A stretch of DNA of 51,214 nucleotides from Octopus bimaculoides (lineage: Eukaryota). Positions 4,544-51,040 of the stretch are shown here, piece by piece. Made by a program: the position numbers and the translations under genes. Position 1 is the first letter of the stretch, and the number at the start of each line of letters is the position of its first letter. The stretch spans positions 83,892,851-83,944,064 of the forward strand of contig NC_068987.1 in NCBI RefSeq assembly GCF_001194135.2, read 5' to 3'. The notes below the pieces were generated by a model. The model was not told the origin of the DNA. It saw nothing but the letters and a program-made list of their open reading frames with translations, and made no database searches.

Positions 4544-5643
4544 GTATATCTAAGAAGCTGACCAGCCAAGTTTGTATTACAGTTTCGAGGCTGTAGTAAC
4601 ATTTTGAAAAAAAAAAAAGACCATTAAACACTACTTATCACTGCTGACTAGTTTCCAGAAAGCAGTCGGGACGGGAAGACATCTTTAAAATTCGATATGA
4701 AACAAGATTTGTGCTAAACTGGGCAACAGCAGTTGAGAAACTTCTGAAATGCTCTAAACTGTTTATGGGTTAACTTGGAAGAGAACGTTCAAGGACAGTA
4801 AGAGACGTTGAGAGATGGAGGAGGGAGAGGGACATCAGAACATCAGAGCTGGTTGAGAAAATTCGTAATTTATCGTCAAATGTCTATAAAAACAATGAGG
4901 ATATAATTTGGAGTTCGTGTGGCAACTATACTCAGAATTATTCAACTGAATATGAGCAAAATTGTGCAAAGTTTTCTATTTGAGTGCCAAATGACGAACA
5001 GAAGAAAAGACGCATTGGTGACAGCAAAGAGATGACCGGGCTCATTACTCCAGTCCAAGAGTATTGGCGTCTCAGTTATAATACAGAAACCAAGAAACAG
5101 AGTGACAAAAGGAAGCATCCTGTTTTCTCCGGACTCAAGAATACCAGGTAAAGCAGGTTCCACGGGAAGCTCATGACGATTCCCTTTTTTAGCAGCAAGG
5201 ATATCATCTACAAAGAGTACTTTGCAAATGATTAGTGGGAGTTCGAGAGGAGATTTCGTCGCAAAAGATCGGAGCTCTTTCACACGGGTTGGTGGTACCT
5301 GCACCAGGGCAATGCACCAGTCTACACTTTTTATCCTGATAACTGACTCCTTGATAGAAGTGGGCATCAAAACCTGTCCCTCACTCACCTTAAAATCCAG
5401 ATTTGCACCCTGTCAGTTTTGGTTGTTCCCCAAGCTAAAGGAGAATAGAAAAGAGGCTGTGACGAGGGTCTTGGACCCCATCACATAGAAGGACTCCACG
5501 AAATTGCTGGAGAGCTACAGCAAGTGCATTGATGTCAGAGGATCCTACTTTGAAGGTTATTAGAAAGTTGTGCGTCTTTAAAATTAAAAAAAGTTTACAT
5601 TATTTACATTTGACGGATATTTGTTCTCATCTTGTTTATTGCA

Positions 5644-5689
5644 AACACAACATTTCGGCTGATATACCCTCAAGCCTTCATCAGGTGTC
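5644..5689 (-). ncRNA. Minimal type I hammerhead ribozyme
   Basis: GACAC-CUGAUGA-A-GGCU(12 nt)AGCC-GAAAU-GUU^GUGUU: helix I 5 bp with one G.U, helix II 4 bp, zero-loop helix III. Confidence 0.7.
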
Positions 5690-5727
5690 TCGGGGAAATT
5701 TCGAACCTGGATTCTCATTCCTAAGGT

Positions 5728-5833: not shown

Positions 5834-7341
5834 TTACTGCCTGGAATCGAACTCGGAATCTTGGGGTTTGTAGCCCGCGCTCTTAACTACTGCGCCATAT
5901 GCCCGTGGGCGTAGTGATTAAAAGCGCAGTGCAAATATCCGTCAAATGTAAATAATGTAAATAATGTACACAACTCCTCATCTCTTAAATATAGAACTGT
6001 AATAAAAGTCTGTTCACAAAAAGTGTCAAAACTTCTGGAATGCACCTTGTATTTTCTGTCTGATGACCTAATAGTGTGTTTCCTTCGTTGCATTTCTATT
6101 TTGATATTTAATGATCATTATTTTATACAGAGAACACTGATGTAACACAATTGTTTTTCGTGAAGATGTCGCTTCTGGGTGATTCACTGCATGCACCTAC
6201 TTATGCAATTTGCACATAGTACTTGGCATGAGTAGAGAGAAAGATGCTTTATGTGTCATATTTACCAGAACAGTCAAATGTAGATCAAATGGCTTCGTAT
6301 GTTTTGTTGACTGACAACAATTGCAATGTGAACAGAAAAAAAAGAGTTGTTGAATTGATATAATTATTGAAACGTCTCTGTGTATNNNNNNNNNNNNNNN
6401 NNNNNNNNNNNNNNNNNNNNNNNNNNNNNNNNNNNNNNNNNNNNNNNNNNNNNNNNNNNNNNNNNNNNNNNNNNNNNNNNNNNNNNNNNNNNNNNNNNNN
6501 NNNNNNNNNNNNNNNNNNNNNNNNNNNNNNNNNNNNNNNNNNNNNNNNNNNNNNNNNNNNNNNNNNNNNNNNNNNNNNNNNNNNNNNNNNNNNNNNNNNN
6601 NNNNNNNNNNNNNNNNNNNNNNNNNNNNNNNNNNNNNNNNNNNNNNNNNNNNNNNNNNNNNNNNNNNNNNNNNNNNNNNATATATATATGTATATACATG
6701 CATACATGGTAGTGCAAGTACATGATAGCCATAAAAGACAGGGAGTTAGTCAACGTAGGCAGATACAACAACTATTAAAATAATTAAGTAAGGTAGAATA
6801 AGAAAGACATAATTAAGAGAAACAAAGAAGAAACGAAGCCACAATTGTTTAGGTGTGCGCGGACACACACAGACACAGACACACACACACACACACGCAC
6901 ACACACACACGCATGCACACAGACACACACACATACACACACGGTGAAGGACTTTCGTAACTATCTAAGAAATCTTAACGATACGAACATTTAGGAATGT
7001 TTGCCTGGTGTGCGGCGAGCGAACGCCTGTCACTGACGAAGCGCAGTATGCTAAAATCAAGTGGTCTAGCTGTTCTGACTCTCTTGCCAGACGGTTCTCG
7101 TCTGCTAACAATATATGTTTATCCTTTTAGTAATCTGCGTCCATATGAGAGTATCTCTCAATGCGACAACGGCTGTATTCAGTGTTTTAATAACATACCC
7201 ACGTTAAATAGATTCTGAAGAATCCGAGTTCAGTAAACAAACCCGAAGGCTATAAATAACGGAGAAGAGCGACACACACATAGACCCTTTTTGGTTACAA
7301 ATTTAGAAATATATATACGAGATTTAAATTATCTATACTGT

Positions 7342-15939: not shown

Positions 15940-16570
15940 AAGAGTGTGGAAAATGTGACCCACTTGGTAAGAAGATGTGAGAGGCTTGCACAAAAAGAAT
16001 ACAAGCGCTACCATGTAAGGTGTGTGTGTATCTTCATTGCTTCATGTGCTGTAAATATCGATATGAAGTAACAGAGAACTGGTATGAGCATATACCAAGT
16101 AAAGTTATGCAGGAGGATGGAAAAGTAACGATACTTTCGGGAATGTGATTTTCAGACGAATCGTGTAATCGACACCGTCGGTCGGATATTGTCATATTGA
16201 GTAAGAGAAACAAATACTGTCAGATCATTGATGTAGCCATACCAAATGACATGAATGTTGTGAGTAAAGAGGTTGAAAAAATCACCAAGTACTTCGAACT
16301 GAAAGCGGAAATGGAAAGACTGTATGGAATTCGAGAGGGTAATGTAAGAGTGATACAAGTGGTGATCGGAGCATTGGGCTCAATCCCATTGAAACTTCAA
16401 GACTTCTTAAGTCAACTGGAAATCTTATGCAAGATTGATGTCCTTCAAAAAGCAACCTTATTGGACCCAGCGCACATCTTACGGAAAGTATTATCTGTCT
16501 AAGGTCCTTGGTGTGACTTGGCAGATGACTAAAGACTTCGGTGCATTTTTACCTGCACTGTTTTACGAAG

Positions 16571-20134: not shown

Positions 20135-20290
20135 ATATGTATGTATGTATGTATGTATTTATGTATGTATGTATGTATGTATGTATGTACGTATGTATCT
20201 GTGTATGCATGTATGTGTGTGTATGTATGTGTGTATGTATGTATATGTGTATGTATGTATGTGTGTACGTATGTATGTATGTATGTATTA
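20135..20290. repeat. (TATG)n microsatellite
   Basis: Direct. Confidence 0.9.
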
Positions 20291-20701
20291 TATGAACATG
20301 GTTACAATAAAAAAAATCTGGATGTTGTACTTTACTAAAAGCTCTGCTAGAAAGTTTCGCTCTCTAAATACTAAATTTAAAGAATTTCAGTAATCTTTGC
20401 AATATGCCGTGGCAGTATAAATGAAGGAGAGGACAAATGAAAAATGGAAAGAGATGGAATGAAGGAGAAAGCTGAAGAAACTACAAGAGGTAAGTGATGA
20501 GCTACTACAGAGAAAAAAACCTATACACACACATCTGCGTATGCTCAAAAATGTGTGTGTGTGGGTGTGCTTTGAGCACGTATCTCAACTCTTTAACAAC
20601 GAGGTAATATTCACTGAAAGTGGTCAATGTTCACTTGATTAATATAACGTGTAAACTGTTCTGCCAGCTCAGCATCTCACTTTTAATCTCAATAAAATAA
20701 T

Positions 20702-21140
20702 ACTTTCTGCTATAAGCACAAGGCCTGAAATTTTGGGTATGGGGTGGAGGGTAGTCGATTACATTGACCCCAGTGTTTTACTGGTACTTAATTTATCGAC
20801 CCCGAAAGGATGAAAGGCAAAGTCGACGTCGGTGGCATTTGAACTCAGAACGTAGTGGCAGAAGAAATACCGCTAAGCATTTTGCTGTGTGAGCTAACGA
20901 GTCTGCCAGCTCGCCACCCTCCGTTTCAATAAAATAATATTTTCTACTCTAAGCACAAGGCCCGAAATATTTGGAGAGGAAGCCAGTCGATTAGATCGAT
21001 CCTAGTACACAACTGGTATTTAATCTATCGACCCCGAAAGGATGAAAGGTAAAGTCAACCTCGGTGGAATTTGAACTCAGAACGTTCACACGGACGAAAT
21101 TCCGCTAAGCATTTTGCTCGGCGTGCTAACGATTCTGCCT
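20702..21140 (-). mobile_element. Two tandem SINE A copies (20702-20920, 20939-21140)
   Basis: Two reverse matches, bounded by three copies of tcaataaaataat. Confidence 0.9.
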
Positions 21141-32295: not shown

Positions 32296-32725
32296 TTGTT
32301 GCTAATTTTGATTTTCTTGTTAGCCACTATAAACTGCTGTTGCTAGCTTAAATTTTTTTTTGGCTAGCCACATTAAGCTGTTGTTGCTAATTTTGATTTT
32401 CTTCTTAGCCACAATAAGCTGATATCGTTAATCTTTCTTCGTAGCACCGCTAAGTTGCTGTCGCTAATTTTGGTTTTATAGTTAGCCACGCTAAACTGTT
32501 GAGTTGCTGTTGCCAGCGTTAATTTTTTGCTTTAGCTAGCCACATTAAGCTGCCACTGTTAATTTTGATTTTCGTGTTTGTCACGATAAACTGCTGTCAT
32601 TAATCTTTCTTCGTAGCACTGCTAAGTTGCTGTCGCTAATTTTGATTTTCTGGTTGGCCACGATAAGCTCTTGTCAATTTTGTTTGAAAGCACCACTAAG
32701 CTACCGTTGCTAGTTTTGATTTTCA
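32296..32725. repeat. ~36-49 bp minisatellite with higher-order periodicity
   Basis: About 11 monomers related to gctaattttgattttcttgttagccactataaactgctgtt. Confidence 0.85.
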
Positions 32726-33710: not shown

Positions 33711-34145
33711 TAATCTTCTCTACTCAAGGCACAAGGCACGAAATTTGGGGGGAGAGGGCTAGTCGATTAAATCGACCCCACTACGCAACTGGGACTTAAT
33801 TTATCGACCACAAAAGGATGAAAGGCACAGTCGACCTCGGCGGAATTTGAACTCAGAACGTAGCGGCAGACGAAATACTGCTAAACATTTCGCCCGGCGT
33901 GCTAACGTTTCTTATTTCTTTATTGCCCACAAGGAGCTAAACGTAGAGGGGACAAACAAGGACAAACAAAGGGATTAAGTCGATCACATCGACCCCAGTG
34001 CGTAACTGGTACTTAATTTATCGACCCCGAAAGGATGAAAGGCAAAGTCGACCTCGGCAGAATTTGAACTCAGAACGTAACGGCAGACGCAATACCGATA
34101 AGCATTTCGCCCACGTGCTAGCGATTCTGCCAGCTCGCCGCCTTA
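33711..34145 (-). mobile_element. SINE A dimer: full copy with tail 1 (34145-33913) fused to a headless copy with tail 2 (33912-33711)
   Basis: Minus-strand junction caataaagaaata|agaaacgttagcacgccgggcg. Confidence 0.9.
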
Positions 34146-40185: not shown

Positions 40186-40842
40186 TCGTCGAGCTGGCAG
40201 AATCGTTAGCACGCCAGGGAAAATGCTTAGCGGTATTTCGTCTGTCTTTACGTTCTGAGTTCAAATTCCGCCGAGGTCGACCTTACCTTTCATCCTTTCA
40301 AGATCGATAAATCAAGTACCAGTTACGCACTGGGGTCGATCTAATCAACTGACCGCCTCCCCTAAAATTCCGGGCCTTGTGCCTAGAATAGAAAAGAATA
40401 TGAATGTAATAAAGATGGCGAGCTGGCAGAAATGTTAGCACACCGGACAATATGCTTAGCGATATGTCGTCTGTCTTTATGTTCTGAGTTCAAATTCCAC
40501 CGAGGTCGACTTTGCCTTTTATCCTTTCAGGGTCGATAAATAAAGTACCAGTTACGCACTGGGGTCGATCTAATCGACTTAATCCCTTTGTCTGTCCTTG
40601 TTTGTCCCCACTATGTTTAGCCCCTTGTGGGCAATAAAGAAATAAAAAAACTTCAGCACACCGGGCGAAATGCTAAGCGGTATTTCGTTTGTCTTTAAGT
40701 TTTGAGTTCAAATTCCGCCGAGGTCGACCTTATCTTTCATCCTTTCGGGGCTGATAAATTAAGTACCAGTTGCGTACTGGGATCGATCTAATCGGCTGGC
40801 CCCAAAACTTTCGGGCCTTGTGCCTTGAGTAGAAACCAATAT
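40186..40842 (+). mobile_element. Cluster of three SINE A copies (40186-40400, 40412-40644, headless 40645-40842)
   Basis: Family motifs; the middle copy has tail 1 and the others tail 2. Confidence 0.9.
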
Positions 40843-43445: not shown

Positions 43446-43769
43446 CATAACTAGAAATATTGACTAATGTGTGCATGCCGGCGTGTGAAGGAATAAAATT
43501 GTTAAGGTCTACCTATGAAAAGCAGGCATCTTGTTTCAATATGTTTTTCCTTCTGCGACCAGGAAAAGATATCGCCCTGGATAGTTTCAGTATGTATTAG
43601 TGCTTCATCAGTGACCAGGTGCTTATTCATCTCAAGAGAGAGAATTGTTACTTATTGCTATTTATATAAGTTCGTGCAAACTAATTTTGCTCACCTATTT
43701 CGTATAAGAGTGCAAACGTTTGAAAAAGTACATCCATAATTCTAAAATGTAATGATATGACTTCAGCTT

Positions 43770-44156
43770 TCATGCTGTCTCTCACTACCACTCGATTTCT
43801 ATCTCCCTCTCTCTCTCTTTCTCTCCATAATTCTTTATATACACATAAATACACATATACACATGTGTGTATATGCATATATATATTTATATATATACAT
43901 ACATACATATATATCTATATATATATGTCTCTTTCTATATATATATATATATGTGTGTGTGTATGTATATATATGTGTGTGCGTGTGTGTGTGTATATGC
44001 ATGCACACACATGTATATATGTATGTATATTTGTACATGTGTATATGCATAGAAATATATACACGTATACGTACACATACACACACACAAACATATATAT
44101 ATACACAAACATCTATATGTATATAAACACGTATATATGAATACACCCACATACAC

Positions 44157-44205
<49 letters not shown>

Positions 44206-44402
44206 NNNNNNNNNNNNNNNNNNNNNNNNNNNNNNNNNNNNNNNNNNNNNNNNNNNNNNNNNNNNNNNNNNNNNNNNNNNNNNNNNNNNNNNNNNNNNNN
44301 NNNNNNNNNNNNNNNNNNNNNNNNNNNNNNNNNNNNNNNNNNNNNNNNNNNNNTTTGGGAATTTACGTGAAAAATAAACATTTTAACCACGTTGCTATCG
44401 TG

Positions 44403-45603: not shown

Positions 45604-46080
45604 CGTCATATTGAAGTAACCTGGACTCTGTCTTTTCTATGCAGACATTACCATAGTTCAAATTAATTCTTAAATATTAATAGAACTTACTCTGAAATGA
45701 AATCATTTAAACGCATTAGATTCTACTCAGTAAAGCTTCTCTGTTTATTTTCCATAAAATATATTTTCCATAAAATATATTTTCCAAATAGGAATAGGCA
45801 TGGCTGTGTGGTTAAGAAGCATTTTTTTTTTCGATATTACATGGTTTCAGGTTCAGTCCCAGGTCGTTGTACATTCTGGTCGGTGAATAAATTGTGAGCA
45901 AATTTGACCATCGGGAACGGCGTGAAAGTCCTTCGTATGTATCTGTGTGTGTTTGTGCGTGTATGCATGTGCAAAACACCCTTTCTTTCTTTCCCCGAGC
46001 GCCATATTTAATACTTTGCATGTACCACATCCTCGCGTTGTTGTTTTTTCTTGTCTTTTATTCTTTTTCATTAACTATAT

Positions 46081-46206
46081 AGGCGCAGGAGTGGCTGTGT
46101 GATAAGTAGCTTGCTTACCAACCATATGATTCCGGGTTCAGTCCCACTGCGTGGCACCTTGGGCGAGTGTCTTATAGTATAGACGGAAACTGAAAGAAGC
46201 CCGTCG

Positions 46207-46239
<33 letters not shown>

Positions 46240-46445
46240 ATATGTTCCTGTGCCTGTGTCCCCCCCCCCCAGCATCACTTGACAACCGATGCTGGTGTGT
46301 TTACGTCCCGGTAATTTAGCGGTTCAGCAAAAGGGACCAATAAAACAAGTACTAGGCTTACAAAGAATAAGTCCTGGGCTCGACTAAAGGCGGTGCTCTA
46401 GCATGGTCGCAGTCAAATGACTGAAAAAAGTAAAAGAGTAAAAGA
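46081..46445 (+). mobile_element. SINE family B (tRNA head, CORE-like segment, internal microsatellite)
   Basis: A-box-like tggctgtgtgataag, B-box-like gggttcagtccc, CORE-like ggcaccttgggcgagtgtctt, then (TA)(TG)n and a tail ending aagtaaaagagtaaaaga. Confidence 0.9.
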
Positions 46446-46945
46446 ATATATATATATATGAAAGAGAGAGGGGGGAAGATGTGTGTTGTGTGTGCACGTC
46501 TCTGTCTCTCTAACCTCCATCACTCAACAACTCGCGTTGATCTGTTTAAACCCCGTTATGTAGCGATTCAGCAACAAAAAATGACAGATTATGTTCCAGA
46601 TTTCAAGAAAGCCTTTTGGTCGATTTGTTCACCTAAACCAGTGATTCTCCATAATTTTCTGTCGATCGATCCCCCTTCGATTCTTATTTTGCTCGGCTGG
46701 ATCTCTGTAGCCCTTCGATGATTCAAAGAATCCTATCATTATATTTTAATCATTAAATATTTTTAGGATTTATGTAAAAAAGAAATTGTTAAAATACTTT
46801 AAAGTAGTTGTATACTGTTAACTTAACGCGACAGTCCCAATAAGGGAATCATGATACTGGTATTTAGCCCTAGGAAACTGGATCGCTTCCTGTCGGCCTT
46901 GACGCATTTCCTGTGTCCTTATGTTTACGAGTCGGAGACAAACAC

Positions 46946-47145
46946 CTCCATCCAGCCAAGCCTGCATCTGTTTCTGACTTTTTGTTCGTCATCAGCCTGG
47001 TGTAGCATGACTTGCTGGCTGAAGATGCCTGTCAAGCTAAGCATCTCCACCCAGCCAAGCCTGCATCCAGGGACATGTTTCTGAGTTTTTGCTTGTCATC
47101 AGCCTGGAGTATCACGACTAGCTGTCTGTAGATGCCTGTCACGCT
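46946..47145 (-). repeat. Two-copy 107-bp tandem unit carrying a hammerhead (retrozyme-like)
   Basis: Units start at 46946 and 47045; the left unit has an 8-nt deletion (cagggaca). Confidence 0.85.
47066..47108 (-). ncRNA. Minimal type I hammerhead ribozyme
   Basis: UCCAGG-CUGAUGA-caagcaaaaacuca-GAAAC-AU-GUC^CCUGGA: perfect 6-bp helix I, palindromic ACAUGU helix III, GUC cleavage triplet. Helix II is weak. Confidence 0.7.
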
Positions 47146-47427
47146 CTCCTATTAAAATACTTTGTTTATTGTAAAAGTTTAACCAATTACTTGCACATAA
47201 AATTTTAACAGCAAAATCTTATAGAGACTCTTAAATCTCTTCTGAGGACTGACTGAGAACTGTTGATATAAACTCTTCTAGGAAGAGCCCCAGTATTGCC
47301 GCATTCTAAAAAAGACAGAAGAAATGAATACAAGATAATTTCAAATTTCAAATCTTTACCGGAAGAGAACTGGACAGTTTATATTCTACCTCTGCGAGAC
47401 AGAATTTGTTTTTCATATATATGAAAT

Positions 47428-47742
47428 AGGCACAGGAGTGGCTGAGTGGTAAGAAGCTTGCTTCCCGGCCACATGGTTCCGGGTTCAGTCCCACTGCGTG
47501 GCACCTTGGGCAAGTGTCTTCTATAGCCGCGGGCCGACCATAGTCTTGTGAGTGGATTTAGTAGACGGAAACTGAAAGAAGCCCGTCATGTATGCATGTA
47601 TTTGTGTGTCTGTGTTTTTCCTCCCCACCATCGATTGACAACCGATGTTAAAGTGTTTACGTCTTCGTAACTTAGCGGTTCGGCAATAGATACCGATAGA
47701 ATAAGTAGTAGGCTTACAAAGTATGGGGTCGATTTGTTTGAC
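47428..47742 (+). mobile_element. SINE family B, runs into an N-gap
   Basis: Matches 46081-46445, including the segment deleted there. Confidence 0.9.
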
Positions 47743-48054
47743 NNNNNNNNNNNNNNNNNNNNNNNNNNNNNNNNNNNNNNNNNNNNNNNNNNNNNNNNNN
47801 NNNNNNNNNNNNNNNNNNNNNNNNNNNNNNNNNNNNNNNNNNNNNNNNNNNNNNNNNNNNNNNNNNNNNNNNNNNNNNNNNNNNNNNNNNNNNNNNNNNN
47901 NNNNNNNNNNNNNNNNNNNNNNNNNNNNNNNNNNNNNNNNNNNNNNNNNNNNNNNNNNNNNNNNNNNNNNNNNNNNNNNNNNNNNNNNNNNNNNNNNNNN
48001 NNNNNNNNNNNNNNNNNNTGTACATATATATGGGAGAATGTACGAAAAAAACAA

Positions 48055-48200: not shown

Positions 48201-48261
48201 AATGTATGTATGTATATACACACACACACACACTCACACACACATTTGTGTGTGTGAGTGT

Positions 48262-48470
48262 GTGTTGTGTGTCTATATTTGTCACCCACAACCGCTTGAG
48301 AACCGGTGTTGGTATGTTTACGTTCCCAGAACTAGTGGTTCCGCAAAAGAGCTCGATAGAAAAAGTACGTGGCTTAAAAATTTATAAGCCCCGGGGTCAA
48401 TTTGTCCCACTAAAACACTTCAAATCCGTGCCCCAGTATGGTAACAAATATTAAAAAAATGAAAAAGATT
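48262..48470 (+). mobile_element. SINE B-like 3' part
   Basis: cttgagaaccggtgttggtatgtttacgttccc...gtgccccagtatgg. Confidence 0.7.
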
Positions 48471-50601: not shown

Positions 50602-51040
50602 TAAGGCGGTAAGCTGGCAGAAACGTTAGCACGCCGGGCGAAATGCTTAGCGGTATTTCGTCTGCCGTTACGTACTGAGTTCAAATTCCGCCAAGGTCGA
50701 CTTTGCCTTTCACCTTTTCGAGGTCGATAAATTAAGTACCAGTTACGCACTGGGGTCGATATGATCGACTTAATCCTTTTGTCTGTCCTTGTTTGTCCCT
50801 TCTATGTTTAGCCCCTTGTGGACAACAAAGAAATCAAAAACGTTAGCACGCCGGGCGAAATGCTCAACGGTGTTTCTTTTGTCTTACGCTCTCAGTTCAA
50901 ATACCACCGAGATTATTTTTGACTTTTATCTTGTTGAGGTTCGATAAAATAAGTACCAGTCGAATACGTGGGTCGCTGTAACCGGTTTATCCCACCATCC
51001 GAACTTGATGGCCTTTTGCCTCGATTTGAAACCAATATTA
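50602..51040 (+). mobile_element. SINE A dimer: young tail-1 copy (50602-50834) fused to an old headless tail-2 copy (50835-51040)
   Basis: Junction caaagaaatc|aaaaacgttagcacgccgggcg. Confidence 0.9.

What the first reader, a model, noticed from the sequence alone, without database searches (positions are those of the whole stretch)
46946..47145. 107-bp tandem repeat whose unit is built around a minimal hammerhead ribozyme (retrozyme-like)
Seen: two aligned units. On the minus strand the right unit reads UCCAGG CUGAUGA ... GAAAC AU GUC^CCUGGA, with an intact core, a perfect 6-bp helix I and a palindromic ACAUGU helix III. The left unit keeps CUGAUGA and GAAAC but has lost the 8 nt holding the cleavage site. 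Known: tandem units with minimal type I HHRs that work as dimers define animal non-LTR retrozymes and Penelope-like element (PLE) pseudo-LTRs, and they can yield unit-length circular RNAs. Inference: this is a decayed member of a very small (~107 nt) cephalopod retrozyme family. Caveat: helix II is poor, with C.A at the normally G-C closing position in both units.
Basis: partly seen in the sequence, partly recalled or inferred. Interest (0 to 1): 0.85.

Follow-up and report, generated by a model that had tools for sequence, protein, structure and literature searches.

The report
Decayed hammerhead-ribozyme repeat in a mobile-element insertion
Two tandem ~100-nt hairpin units, one still carrying a recognisable but damaged self-cutting "hammerhead" RNA motif, sit inside a ~351-bp insertion flanked by a 12-bp target duplication; it looks like a dead relic of a known kind of ribozyme-bearing retroelement, and no family could be found with the data at hand.

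Summary
Two tandem units, 46940-47038 (99 nt) and 47039-47145 (107 nt), differ by 13 substitutions and one 8-nt indel. On the minus strand the right unit has every conserved hammerhead core base, a perfect 6-bp helix I, a 1-bp helix III capped by the palindrome CAUG, and GUC^C with the cut between 47072 and 47071. Rfam gives only a sub-threshold HH9 match (23.6 bits; gathering score 52). Helix II is poor: 2 of 4 pairs, with C.A at 10.1-11.1. The left unit lost its cleavage site.

New points:
- Each unit folds into a rod-like hairpin on the minus strand only.
- The GC-normal stretch 46801-47151 (two units plus 139 unrelated nt) is bracketed by a perfect 12-nt direct repeat (empirical p about 0.004). 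The mobile unit was therefore probably about 351 bp, not 107 nt.
- There is no other copy in the window, and no reverse transcriptase or endonuclease domain within about 4 kb.
- The collections searched hold almost nothing of the host genome (a positive control largely failed), so whether a family exists is untested.
- A 2026 preprint reports retrozyme consensus lengths of 51-972 bp, so 107 nt is not unprecedented.

Verdict: a probable inactive relic of a known element class, of low to moderate interest.

The parts
47039..47145 (-). Right (5' on the RNA strand) 107-nt unit: a rod-like hairpin with a complete type-I hammerhead motif at its tip
   Evidence: RNA minimum free energy -34.5 kcal/mol, hairpin spanning unit positions 9-107. 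Rfam HH9 match at 47049-47122, 23.6 bits, E = 0.0023.
47066..47108 (-). Hammerhead proper: UCCAGG / CUGAUGA / CAAG-CAAAAA-CUCA / GAAA / CAUG / UC^ / CCUGGA, with the predicted cut between 47072 and 47071
   Evidence: Read directly. It is one of two hits of my descriptor in the window. Helix II forms only A-U and G-C, with C.A and A.C next to the core.
46940..47038 (-). Left (3') 99-nt unit: the same hairpin, with CUGAUGA (46995-46989) and GAAAC (46974-46970) retained but an 8-nt deletion (junction 46969|46968) that removes U16.1, C17 and most of the helix I 3' strand
   Evidence: RNA minimum free energy -34.1 kcal/mol, z = -2.8, no shuffle out of 200 folding as well. No hammerhead hit in Rfam.
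46801..46939 (-). 139-nt segment of normal GC content, not repeated, lying 3' of the units on the RNA strand and inside the duplication-bracketed insert
   Evidence: No similarity to the units beyond shuffled controls. No other copy in the window. GC 0.46-0.50 against 0.14-0.20 in the flanks.
47146..47151 (-). 6 nt (UAGGAG on the RNA strand) between the right-hand target-site duplication and the first unit
   Evidence: Read.
46789..46800 (.). Left copy of the putative 12-bp target-site duplication TTAAAATACTTT
   Evidence: Perfect direct repeat D3. In an empirical test, a repeat of at least 12 nt brackets a 334-bp interval within 40 nt on each side at 0.37% of window positions.
47152..47163 (.). 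Right copy of the putative 12-bp target-site duplication TTAAAATACTTT

Best explanation
The locus is an old, now inactive insertion of about 351 bp (46801-47151) of a non-autonomous retroelement that carries hammerhead ribozymes. This is the class called animal non-LTR retrozymes, thought to derive from Penelope-like elements. The insertion is flanked by a 12-bp target-site duplication.

Its RNA strand is the minus strand. It reads: 6 nt, then two tandem ~100-nt rod-like hairpin modules each tipped by a type-I hammerhead core, then a 139-nt unrelated tail.

Inferred mechanism when the element was alive. A transcript with hammerheads in tandem pairs their palindromic loop 3 (ACAUGU with ACAUGU) into an extended helix III. 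Each ribozyme cuts after GUC. [quoted passage not shown]

Present state. Only the 5' module still has a cleavage site. Its helix II has two pairs and a C.A at 10.1-11.1, possibly from CpG decay of an ancestral CGAG/CUCG stem. The 3' module lost its cleavage site through an 8-nt deletion. Efficient self-cleavage is therefore unlikely.

Shown here: the sequence anatomy, the strand-specific rod fold, the insertion signature and the sub-threshold Rfam match. Inferred, not shown: transcription, cleavage, circles, the mobilising enzyme and the existence of a family.
For: - All conserved core positions, a 6-bp Watson-Crick helix I, the A15.1-U16.1 pair with a CAUG loop, and GUC^C are present.
- The Rfam HH9 alignment covers the full model (positions 1-77), with loop 1 UAC and loop 2 CAAAAA identical to the consensus, E = 0.0023.
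- The architecture matches the description of canonical metazoan type-I hammerheads: helix I 6 bp, helix II 4 bp, helix III 1-2 bp capped by a 2-4 nt palindromic loop, working as dimers in tandem repeats (PMC4209133).
- The units fold as rods on the minus strand (z = -1.28 and -2.80) but not on the plus strand (z = -0.19 and -0.52). Retrozyme circular RNAs are described as highly self-paired (PMC7229834, PMC7761336).
- A stretch of about 50% GC lies within flanks of 14-20% GC and is bracketed by a perfect 12-nt direct repeat, empirical p about 0.004. Target-site duplications longer than 4 bp are reported for animal retrozymes (PMC7229834).
- CpG observed/expected is 0.50 in the insert against 0.89 in the window, and 2 of the 13 differences between units are CG/CA.
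- 235 Hammerhead_1 loci were annotated in a cephalopod genome (PMC6962438).
Against: - The Rfam score is far below the gathering score (23.6 against 52). The hit disappears from a whole-window scan, although its E-value scaled to 51 kb (about 0.17) is under that scan's cutoff of 10, so I attribute the loss to the stricter filters.
- Helix II is not formed in the minimum-free-energy structure.
- No other copy of the units or the tail exists in the 51 kb.
- Nothing related was found in metagenome, viral or prokaryotic genome contigs or among 5.8 billion proteins. Those collections almost entirely lack the host genome, so these negatives weigh little.
- No reverse transcriptase or GIY-YIG domain lies nearby.
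- The insert ends do not coincide with the ribozyme cut site.
- There are only two units, so covariation cannot be assessed.
- 7 of the 13 differences between units are transversions, which is not a clean CpG-decay signature.
Confidence: 0.55

Rival explanations
1. This is a decayed two-unit array of a genuine retrozyme whose unit is 107 nt, made by rolling-circle reverse transcription of a ~107-nt circular RNA. The 139-nt neighbour is unrelated host or co-inserted sequence.
For: - There are almost exactly two head-to-tail units, each a complete hairpin with an 8-nt linker.
- Consensus lengths down to 51 bp are reported (preprint 10.64898/2026.07.22.740005).
Against: - The 12-nt duplication brackets 351 bp including the 139-nt part, which shares the insert's GC content.
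- The units differ at 13% of sites while the duplication is 12/12 identical. If both dated from the same insertion event, the chance of an intact 12-mer is about 0.19 (my calculation). This is weak evidence.
- No further unit or solo unit occurs in 51 kb.
Confidence: 0.2
2. It is a 5'-truncated fragment of an autonomous Penelope-like element, that is part of its pseudo-LTR with its hammerhead, rather than a separate non-autonomous element.
For: - Hammerheads lie in the pseudo-LTRs near the 3' end of Penelope-like elements, and most genomic minimal hammerheads are solitary remnants of truncated copies (PMC4209133, PMC8557442).
- Retrozymes and pseudo-LTRs are sequence relatives in Xenopus.
- On the RNA strand the ribozymes lie 140-350 nt from the 3' end of the insert.
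Against: - No Pfam domain, including reverse transcriptase or GIY-YIG, was found in non-repetitive ORFs of at least 55 aa between 42.8 and 51.2 kb.
- The hammerhead architecture is the canonical type I, not the PLE minimal type with a long helix II and short helix I (PMC4209133).
- Two ribozyme hairpins 107 nt apart are not the reported pseudo-LTR layout.
Confidence: 0.12
3. The resemblance is chance. A locally duplicated hairpin-forming sequence (an inverted-repeat element or a microRNA-like hairpin pair) happens to have a terminal loop that matches the short hammerhead core.
For: - The bare descriptor has 0.0275 chance hits per window, which means hundreds to thousands per Gb-scale genome.
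- A second, probably fortuitous, hit lies at 5643-5690.
- The Rfam score is less than half the gathering score.
- Helix II is poor.
- There is a weak mir-456 match on the left unit, 14.7 bits, E = 5.
Against: - The covariance-model E-value works out at about 2e-4 per window for the hammerhead families.
- Loops 1 and 2, which are not part of the descriptor, equal the HH9 consensus.
- The palindromic loop 3, the tandem arrangement, the strand-specific rod and the insertion signature all co-occur.
- The left unit keeps the orphaned 5' strand of helix I.
Confidence: 0.1

Closest known systems
Animal non-LTR retrozymes (Cervera and de la Pena 2020, PMC7229834; Li, Clavereau and Pollet 2026 preprint 10.64898/2026.07.22.740005)
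   Same: - Type-I hammerhead on one strand of short tandem units
- Weak helix III with a palindromic loop, implying action as a dimer
- Rod-like, self-paired unit RNA
- No coding capacity
- Target-site duplication longer than 4 bp
- Monomer and dimer loci are known
   Different: - Only one of the two units has a complete motif.
- Helix II is defective.
- The 107-nt unit is below the 150-450 bp range (170-400 nt circles) that has been characterised experimentally, although it is inside the 51-972 bp range of computed consensus lengths.
- The duplication-bracketed insert carries a 139-nt part that is not repeated.
- GC is about 50% rather than below 45-50%.
- No family, transcript or circle has been shown.
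Rfam Hammerhead_HH9 (RF02275), the canonical metazoan type-I hammerhead conserved in amniote introns
   Same: - Same topology
- Identical CUGAUGA and GAAAC
- Identical loop 2 CAAAAA and identical 5' loop 1 UAC
- 6-bp helix I followed by an internal loop and an outer stem
   Different: - The score is 23.6 bits against a gathering score of 52.
- Helix II is CAAG/CUCA instead of GCUC/GAGC.
- Helix III is 1 bp with CAUG rather than a 3-bp stem-loop.
- The locus is a repeat in a mobile-element insert, not a conserved intronic single copy.
Minimal hammerheads of Penelope-like element pseudo-LTRs (Cervera and de la Pena 2014, PMC4209133)
   Same: - Type-I polarity
- Essentially no helix III, so a dimer is needed
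- Low expected activity as a monomer
- Association with retroelement insertions
   Different: [quoted passage not shown]
- Here helix I is 6 bp with a long extension and helix II has 4 positions with a 6-nt loop.
- No PLE ORF lies nearby.
Satellite hammerheads of newts (satellite 2) and Schistosoma (Sm-alpha)
   Same: Tandem DNA repeats that encode type-I hammerheads; the newt ribozymes cleave as dimers through an extended helix III (PMC6155905).
   Different: Those units are about 330 bp and occur in very large arrays with proven cleavage. Here there are two diverged 99- and 107-nt units at one locus, and activity is unproven.

Membership tests
Hammerhead ribozyme, type I | Conserved core: C3 U4 G5 A6 N7 G8 A9, G12 A13 A14, the A15.1-U16.1 pair, and H17 at the cleavage site | tested here: met
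   Right unit: CUGAUGA 47102-47096, GAAA 47081-47078, U16.1 and C17 at 47073-47072. The left unit fails this: positions 16.1 and 17 are deleted.
Hammerhead ribozyme, type I | Helix I flanks the core and is open-ended (type-I topology) | tested here: met
   UCCAGG/CCUGGA form 6 Watson-Crick pairs, extended by an imperfect stem to the ends of the unit.
Hammerhead ribozyme, type I | Stable helix II closed by a 10.1-11.1 base pair (normally G-C) | tested here: not met
   Right unit, CAAG/CUCA: C.A, A.C, A-U, G-C. Left unit, CGAA/GUCA: C.A, G-C, A-U, A.G. Helix II is absent from the minimum-free-energy fold; it forms only after a hypothetical CpG restoration.
Hammerhead ribozyme, type I | Helix III, or a palindromic loop 3 that allows a dimeric extended helix III | tested here: met
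   A15.1-U16.1 with loop CAUG gives the palindrome ACAUGU. The criterion is as described in PMC4209133.
Hammerhead ribozyme, type I | Rfam gathering score for a hammerhead family | tested here: not met
   HH9 23.6 bits against 52. No match at gathering thresholds.
Hammerhead ribozyme, type I | Mg2+-dependent self-cleavage after position 17 | not testable with these tools
   Needs in vitro transcription of monomer and dimer constructs.
Animal non-LTR retrozyme | At least two consecutive tandem units, each with a complete type-I hammerhead (criterion of the 2026 preprint) | tested here: not met
   Only the right unit is complete. TRF at score >= 30 does not report the repeat.
Animal non-LTR retrozyme | Multi-copy family dispersed in the genome as monomers, dimers and multimers | not testable with these tools
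   - No second copy in the 51-kb window.
- The external collections lack the host genome. A positive control with the window's own abundant SINE found a single protein, so the null result is uninformative.
- Metagenome, viral and prokaryotic genome scans found nothing related.
Animal non-LTR retrozyme | Unit RNA that is non-coding and highly self-paired | tested here: met
   Rod-like hairpins on the minus strand, z = -1.28 and -2.80; plus strand z about -0.2 to -0.5. All six frames of the stretch (46780-47200) contain stop codons, and the longest ORF overlapping the locus (46851-47084, 77 aa) gave no Pfam match above threshold.
Animal non-LTR retrozyme | Unit size within the reported range | tested here: inconclusive
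   107 nt is outside the 150-450 bp range (170-400 nt circles) of PMC7229834 but inside the 51-972 bp consensus range of the 2026 preprint. The duplication-bracketed insert of 351 bp is inside both ranges.
Animal non-LTR retrozyme | Expression as unit-length linear and circular RNA | not testable with these tools
   No transcriptome of the host is available here.
Penelope-like element pseudo-LTR | Hammerhead lies in a terminal repeat next to a reverse transcriptase plus GIY-YIG ORF | tested here: not met
   No Pfam family at E <= 1 in non-repetitive ORFs of at least 55 aa from 42.8 to 51.2 kb. Caveat: assembly gaps lie at about 47743-48019 and 49.0-49.4 kb.
Penelope-like element pseudo-LTR | Minimal hammerhead architecture: helix II of 7-8 bp, helix I of 4-5 bp, and an unpaired base 5' of stem II | tested here: not met
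   Helix I is 6 bp plus an extension; helix II has 4 positions with a 6-nt loop. The feature list is from PMC4209133.

The most novel reading that the evidence does not exclude
The host genome harbours a live or recently live family of ~107-nt rod-shaped hammerhead units that are released as circles of about 107 nt. These would be well below the smallest retrozyme circular RNAs shown experimentally (about 170 nt), and the first characterised in cephalopods. This locus would be one decayed copy of that family.
Probability: 0.1. Interest if true: 0.6.

Novelty: new member of a known kind. Interest (0 to 1): 0.3.

Why it matters
If a family exists, the locus would extend hammerhead-bearing retroelements to a lineage where they have only been counted by automated Rfam annotation (235 Hammerhead_1 loci in the giant squid, PMC6962438). 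It might also give a very compact model: a roughly 100-nt rod with the ribozyme at its tip.

As it stands, it is one decayed copy. It teaches little beyond showing that such relics sit below Rfam and TRF thresholds, so pipelines that depend on those tools will miss them.

Tried and rejected
1. Rfam at gathering thresholds on the whole window gave nothing. The whole-window E-value scan does not list the hammerhead; it returns only sub-threshold microRNA-like hits on TG/TA microsatellites.
2. Self-blastn (word size 7) and nhmmer --max with a two-unit profile, and with the 139-nt tail, found no further copy in the window.
3. Exact-pattern scans:
   - metagenome contigs with the helix II-specific core: 0 hits;
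   - the conserved 17-mer GATGCAGGCTTGGCTGG: 120 loci, all chance matches whose longest extension is 20-29 nt;
   - viral and prokaryotic genome contigs with helix I, core and helix III: 0 hits.
4. A six-frame peptide trick, to find translated copies among 5.8 billion predicted proteins, gave 0 hits at E <= 10. The positive control used the window's own SINE, reverse-transcriptase tail and a putative transposase remnant. It returned only distant relatives of the reverse-transcriptase tail and one metaclust protein carrying the SINE. The database therefore hardly contains the host, and the negative carries no weight.
5. Four exact-protein look-ups to recover the source record and the organism were all not on record. 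ARAGORN found no tRNA, and literature searches for SINE strings found nothing. The organism remains unverified. The SINEs look like octopus SINEs to me from memory only.
6. The other CTGATGA...GAAAC match at 43584-43611 has no helices and is rejected as chance.
7. Covariation between the two units: 0 compensatory pairs. Two sequences give no power, and the consensus structure is circular.
8. Constrained folding of the hammerhead shape was uninformative because a 1-bp helix III is penalised.
9. Similarity between the 139-nt tail and the units does not exceed shuffled controls.
10. The Pfam scans are noted under the membership tests and under items noticed in passing.

Full report
**1. Observation**

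The window is a eukaryotic draft assembly: 4353 N in gaps, many microsatellites, 37% GC. At the given coordinates there are two head-to-tail units, 46940-47038 (99 nt) and 47039-47145 (107 nt).
- The repeat finder reports a 70-nt block at 86% identity with spacing 107, and a 29-nt block at 90% identity with spacing 99.
- The spacing differs because of one 8-nt indel. There are 13 substitutions in the 99 aligned columns.
- TRF did not list the repeat at score >= 30.

On the minus strand the right unit reads UAC-UCCAGG-CUGAUGA-CAAG-CAAAAA-CUCA-GAAA-CAUG-UC^CCUGGA-UGC. Every conserved hammerhead core base is present. Helix I has 6 Watson-Crick pairs. Helix III is the single A15.1-U16.1 pair capped by the palindromic loop CAUG.

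The left unit keeps CUGAUGA and GAAAC but lacks UGUCCCUG. It still carries the partnerless 5' strand ACCAGG, so the indel is a deletion in the left unit rather than an insertion that created a motif in the right unit.

**2. Is it more than chance?**

- The bare core pattern occurs 3 times against 0.17 expected. One of these, at 43584, has no helices.
- My type-I descriptor (6-bp helix I allowing G.U, CUGANGA, 8-30 nt, GAAA, 0-10 nt, UH) hits twice in the window, against 0.0275 expected per window from 400 Markov simulations.
- Scaled to a genome of a few Gb, that is hundreds to thousands of chance hits. The bare motif alone therefore proves nothing genome-wide.

Evidence beyond the descriptor:
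- Rfam HH9 aligns end to end (model positions 1-77) at 23.6 bits, E = 0.0023 for 701 nt against all 4227 families. Loop 1 (UAC) and loop 2 (CAAAAA) are identical to the consensus. By my scaling this is about 2e-4 per window for the hammerhead families.
- The motif sits in a tandem duplication.
- Helix I continues into a ~30-bp imperfect stem, so each unit is a rod-like hairpin.
- The rod is strand-specific: minus-strand RNA z = -1.28 and -2.80, plus-strand z = -0.19 and -0.52.

Against this, the score is less than half the gathering score of 52. Nothing passes at gathering thresholds, and the hit drops out of a whole-window scan. I judge a real hammerhead origin likely (about 0.85-0.9) and present-day activity unlikely.

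**3. Helix II**

Fourteen nucleotides separate A9 and G12.
- Right unit: C.A, A.C, A-U, G-C.
- Left unit: C.A, G-C, A-U, A.G.

The minimum-free-energy fold of the present sequence does not form helix II; instead it pairs GACA with UGUC.

A stem CGAG/CUCG would pair perfectly, and it differs from the observed sequences mainly by CG-to-CA changes. In support, the insert has CpG observed/expected of 0.50 against 0.89 for the window, and 2 of the 13 differences between units are CG/CA. With that restoration the fold adopts helices I and II. This is inference. It also implies C-G rather than the usual G-C at 10.1-11.1, and 7 of the 13 differences are transversions.

**4. Context: an insertion**

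The units lie in a stretch of about 50% GC (roughly 46815-47148) between flanks of 14-20% GC. A perfect 12-nt direct repeat, TTAAAATACTTT, lies at 46789-46800 and 47152-47163.

Isolated 12-mers at distances of 150-600 nt occur roughly ten times per window. In an empirical test, only 0.37% of positions have a repeat of at least 12 nt bracketing a 334-bp interval within 40 nt on each side, and that count includes microsatellite-driven cases. So a 351-bp insert (46801-47151) with a 12-bp target-site duplication is likely.

On the RNA strand the insert reads: 6 nt, right unit, left unit, then 139 nt with no similarity to the units and no other copy in the window. There is no poly-A at either end.

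This favours a composite element of about 351 bp, a size typical of animal retrozymes, whose hammerhead hairpin is internally duplicated. It fits less well with an array copied from a 107-nt circle. The units differ at 13% of sites while the duplication is intact. If both dated from the insertion, the chance of an intact 12-mer is about 0.19, so this point is weak.

SINE copies flank the locus. No Pfam domain was found in non-repetitive ORFs of at least 55 aa between 42.8 and 51.2 kb, so no reverse transcriptase or endonuclease ORF of a Penelope-like element is adjacent.

**5. Search for a family**

There is none in the window. Externally:
- Exact-pattern scans of metagenome, viral and prokaryotic genome contigs gave nothing, or only chance 17-mer hits.
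- A six-frame peptide search of 5.8 billion proteins gave nothing.
- The positive control, using the window's own highly repetitive SINE, recovered a single protein. These resources therefore barely contain the host genome, and the negatives do not count as evidence of absence.
- The source record and the organism could not be recovered.

**6. Comparison with what is known**

- The architecture is what Cervera and de la Pena describe for canonical metazoan type-I hammerheads: helix I 6 bp, helix II 4 bp, helix III 1-2 bp with a 2-4 nt palindromic loop, active as dimers in tandem repeats (PMC4209133).
- It is not their PLE minimal type, which has a 7-8 bp helix II and a 4-5 bp helix I.
- Animal non-LTR retrozymes are tandem units of 150-450 bp, expressed as self-paired circles of 170-400 nt, with target-site duplications longer than 4 bp (PMC7229834). 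They are proposed to be mobilised by, or derived from, Penelope-like elements (PMC7761336; preprint 10.64898/2026.07.22.740005).
- That preprint reports consensus lengths of 51-972 bp, averaging 98 bp in Sarcopterygii, and loci that are monomers or dimers. A 107-nt unit is therefore not unprecedented computationally.
- By its criterion (at least two consecutive complete hammerheads), this locus is not an 'active retrozyme'.
- Hammerhead_1 hits have been counted in a cephalopod genome: 235 in the giant squid (PMC6962438).

**7. Verdict**

- The best explanation (confidence 0.55) is a dead, duplication-flanked ~351-bp insertion of a hammerhead-bearing non-autonomous retroelement with two tandem ribozyme hairpins, one truncated and both with a defective helix II.
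- Rivals: a true 107-nt-unit retrozyme array (0.2), a truncated PLE pseudo-LTR (0.12), and chance resemblance in a duplicated hairpin (0.1).
- Novelty: a new member of a known kind.
- Interest is low to moderate. It would rise only if a host-genome search reveals an intact ~107-nt family or circles.

Noticed in passing
window 5643-5690 (-): A second match to my bare type-I hammerhead descriptor: AGACAC-CUGAUGA-A-GGCU(12 nt)AGCC-GAAA-UG-UU^GUGUUU. It has a 4-bp helix II and an unpaired A 5' of stem II. It gets no Rfam hammerhead hit and is probably fortuitous (0.0275 expected per window), although it resembles the layout of PLE minimal hammerheads.
   Followed up: partly
window 5594-5623 and 5932-5961: A perfect 30-nt inverted repeat encloses about 308 nt. 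The enclosed stretch holds the motif above, the microsatellites (TTC)n and (TTA)n, and a tRNA-like SINE head (about 5840-5905, minus strand). ARAGORN calls no tRNA there.
   Followed up: partly
window about 4945-5545 (+): ORFs that from memory resemble the C-terminus of a mariner/Tc1-type transposase (…FAPCQFWLFPKLKE…, …KCIDVRGSYFEGY*). Pfam gave no hit, so this is unverified.
   Followed up: partly
window 16149-16499 (+): An ORF homologous (40-53% identity) to the C-terminal tail of proteins that carry reverse-transcriptase domains (PF00078, PF13966). It is likely a LINE remnant.
   Followed up: partly
window 46080-46440, 47425-47740, 48280-48450 and others: Several copies of one SINE family flank the hammerhead locus. 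A single metaclust protein (P0029) carries an 80%-identical translation of it. I recognise the SINE as octopus-like from memory only.
   Followed up: partly
window 20689-21139; 32335-32673; 33794-33862, 40190-40350, 50621-50647: A 232-bp tandem repeat (1.9 copies), a 172-bp tandem repeat (2.0 copies), and a further repeat family recurring at 217-232-nt spacing (motif TCGACC…AAAGGATGAAAGG…GAACTCAGAACGT).
   Followed up: no
window, many sites (for example 43838-44215, 20137-20287, 48206-48284): Sub-threshold Rfam 'mir-297/mir-466/mir-3149' matches all fall on TG/TA/CA microsatellites and are artefacts of low-complexity sequence.
   Followed up: yes
window 46796-46807: The junction between the left target-site duplication and the insert forms the palindrome TACTTT|AAAGTA. 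This may be chance or microhomology at integration.
   Followed up: no
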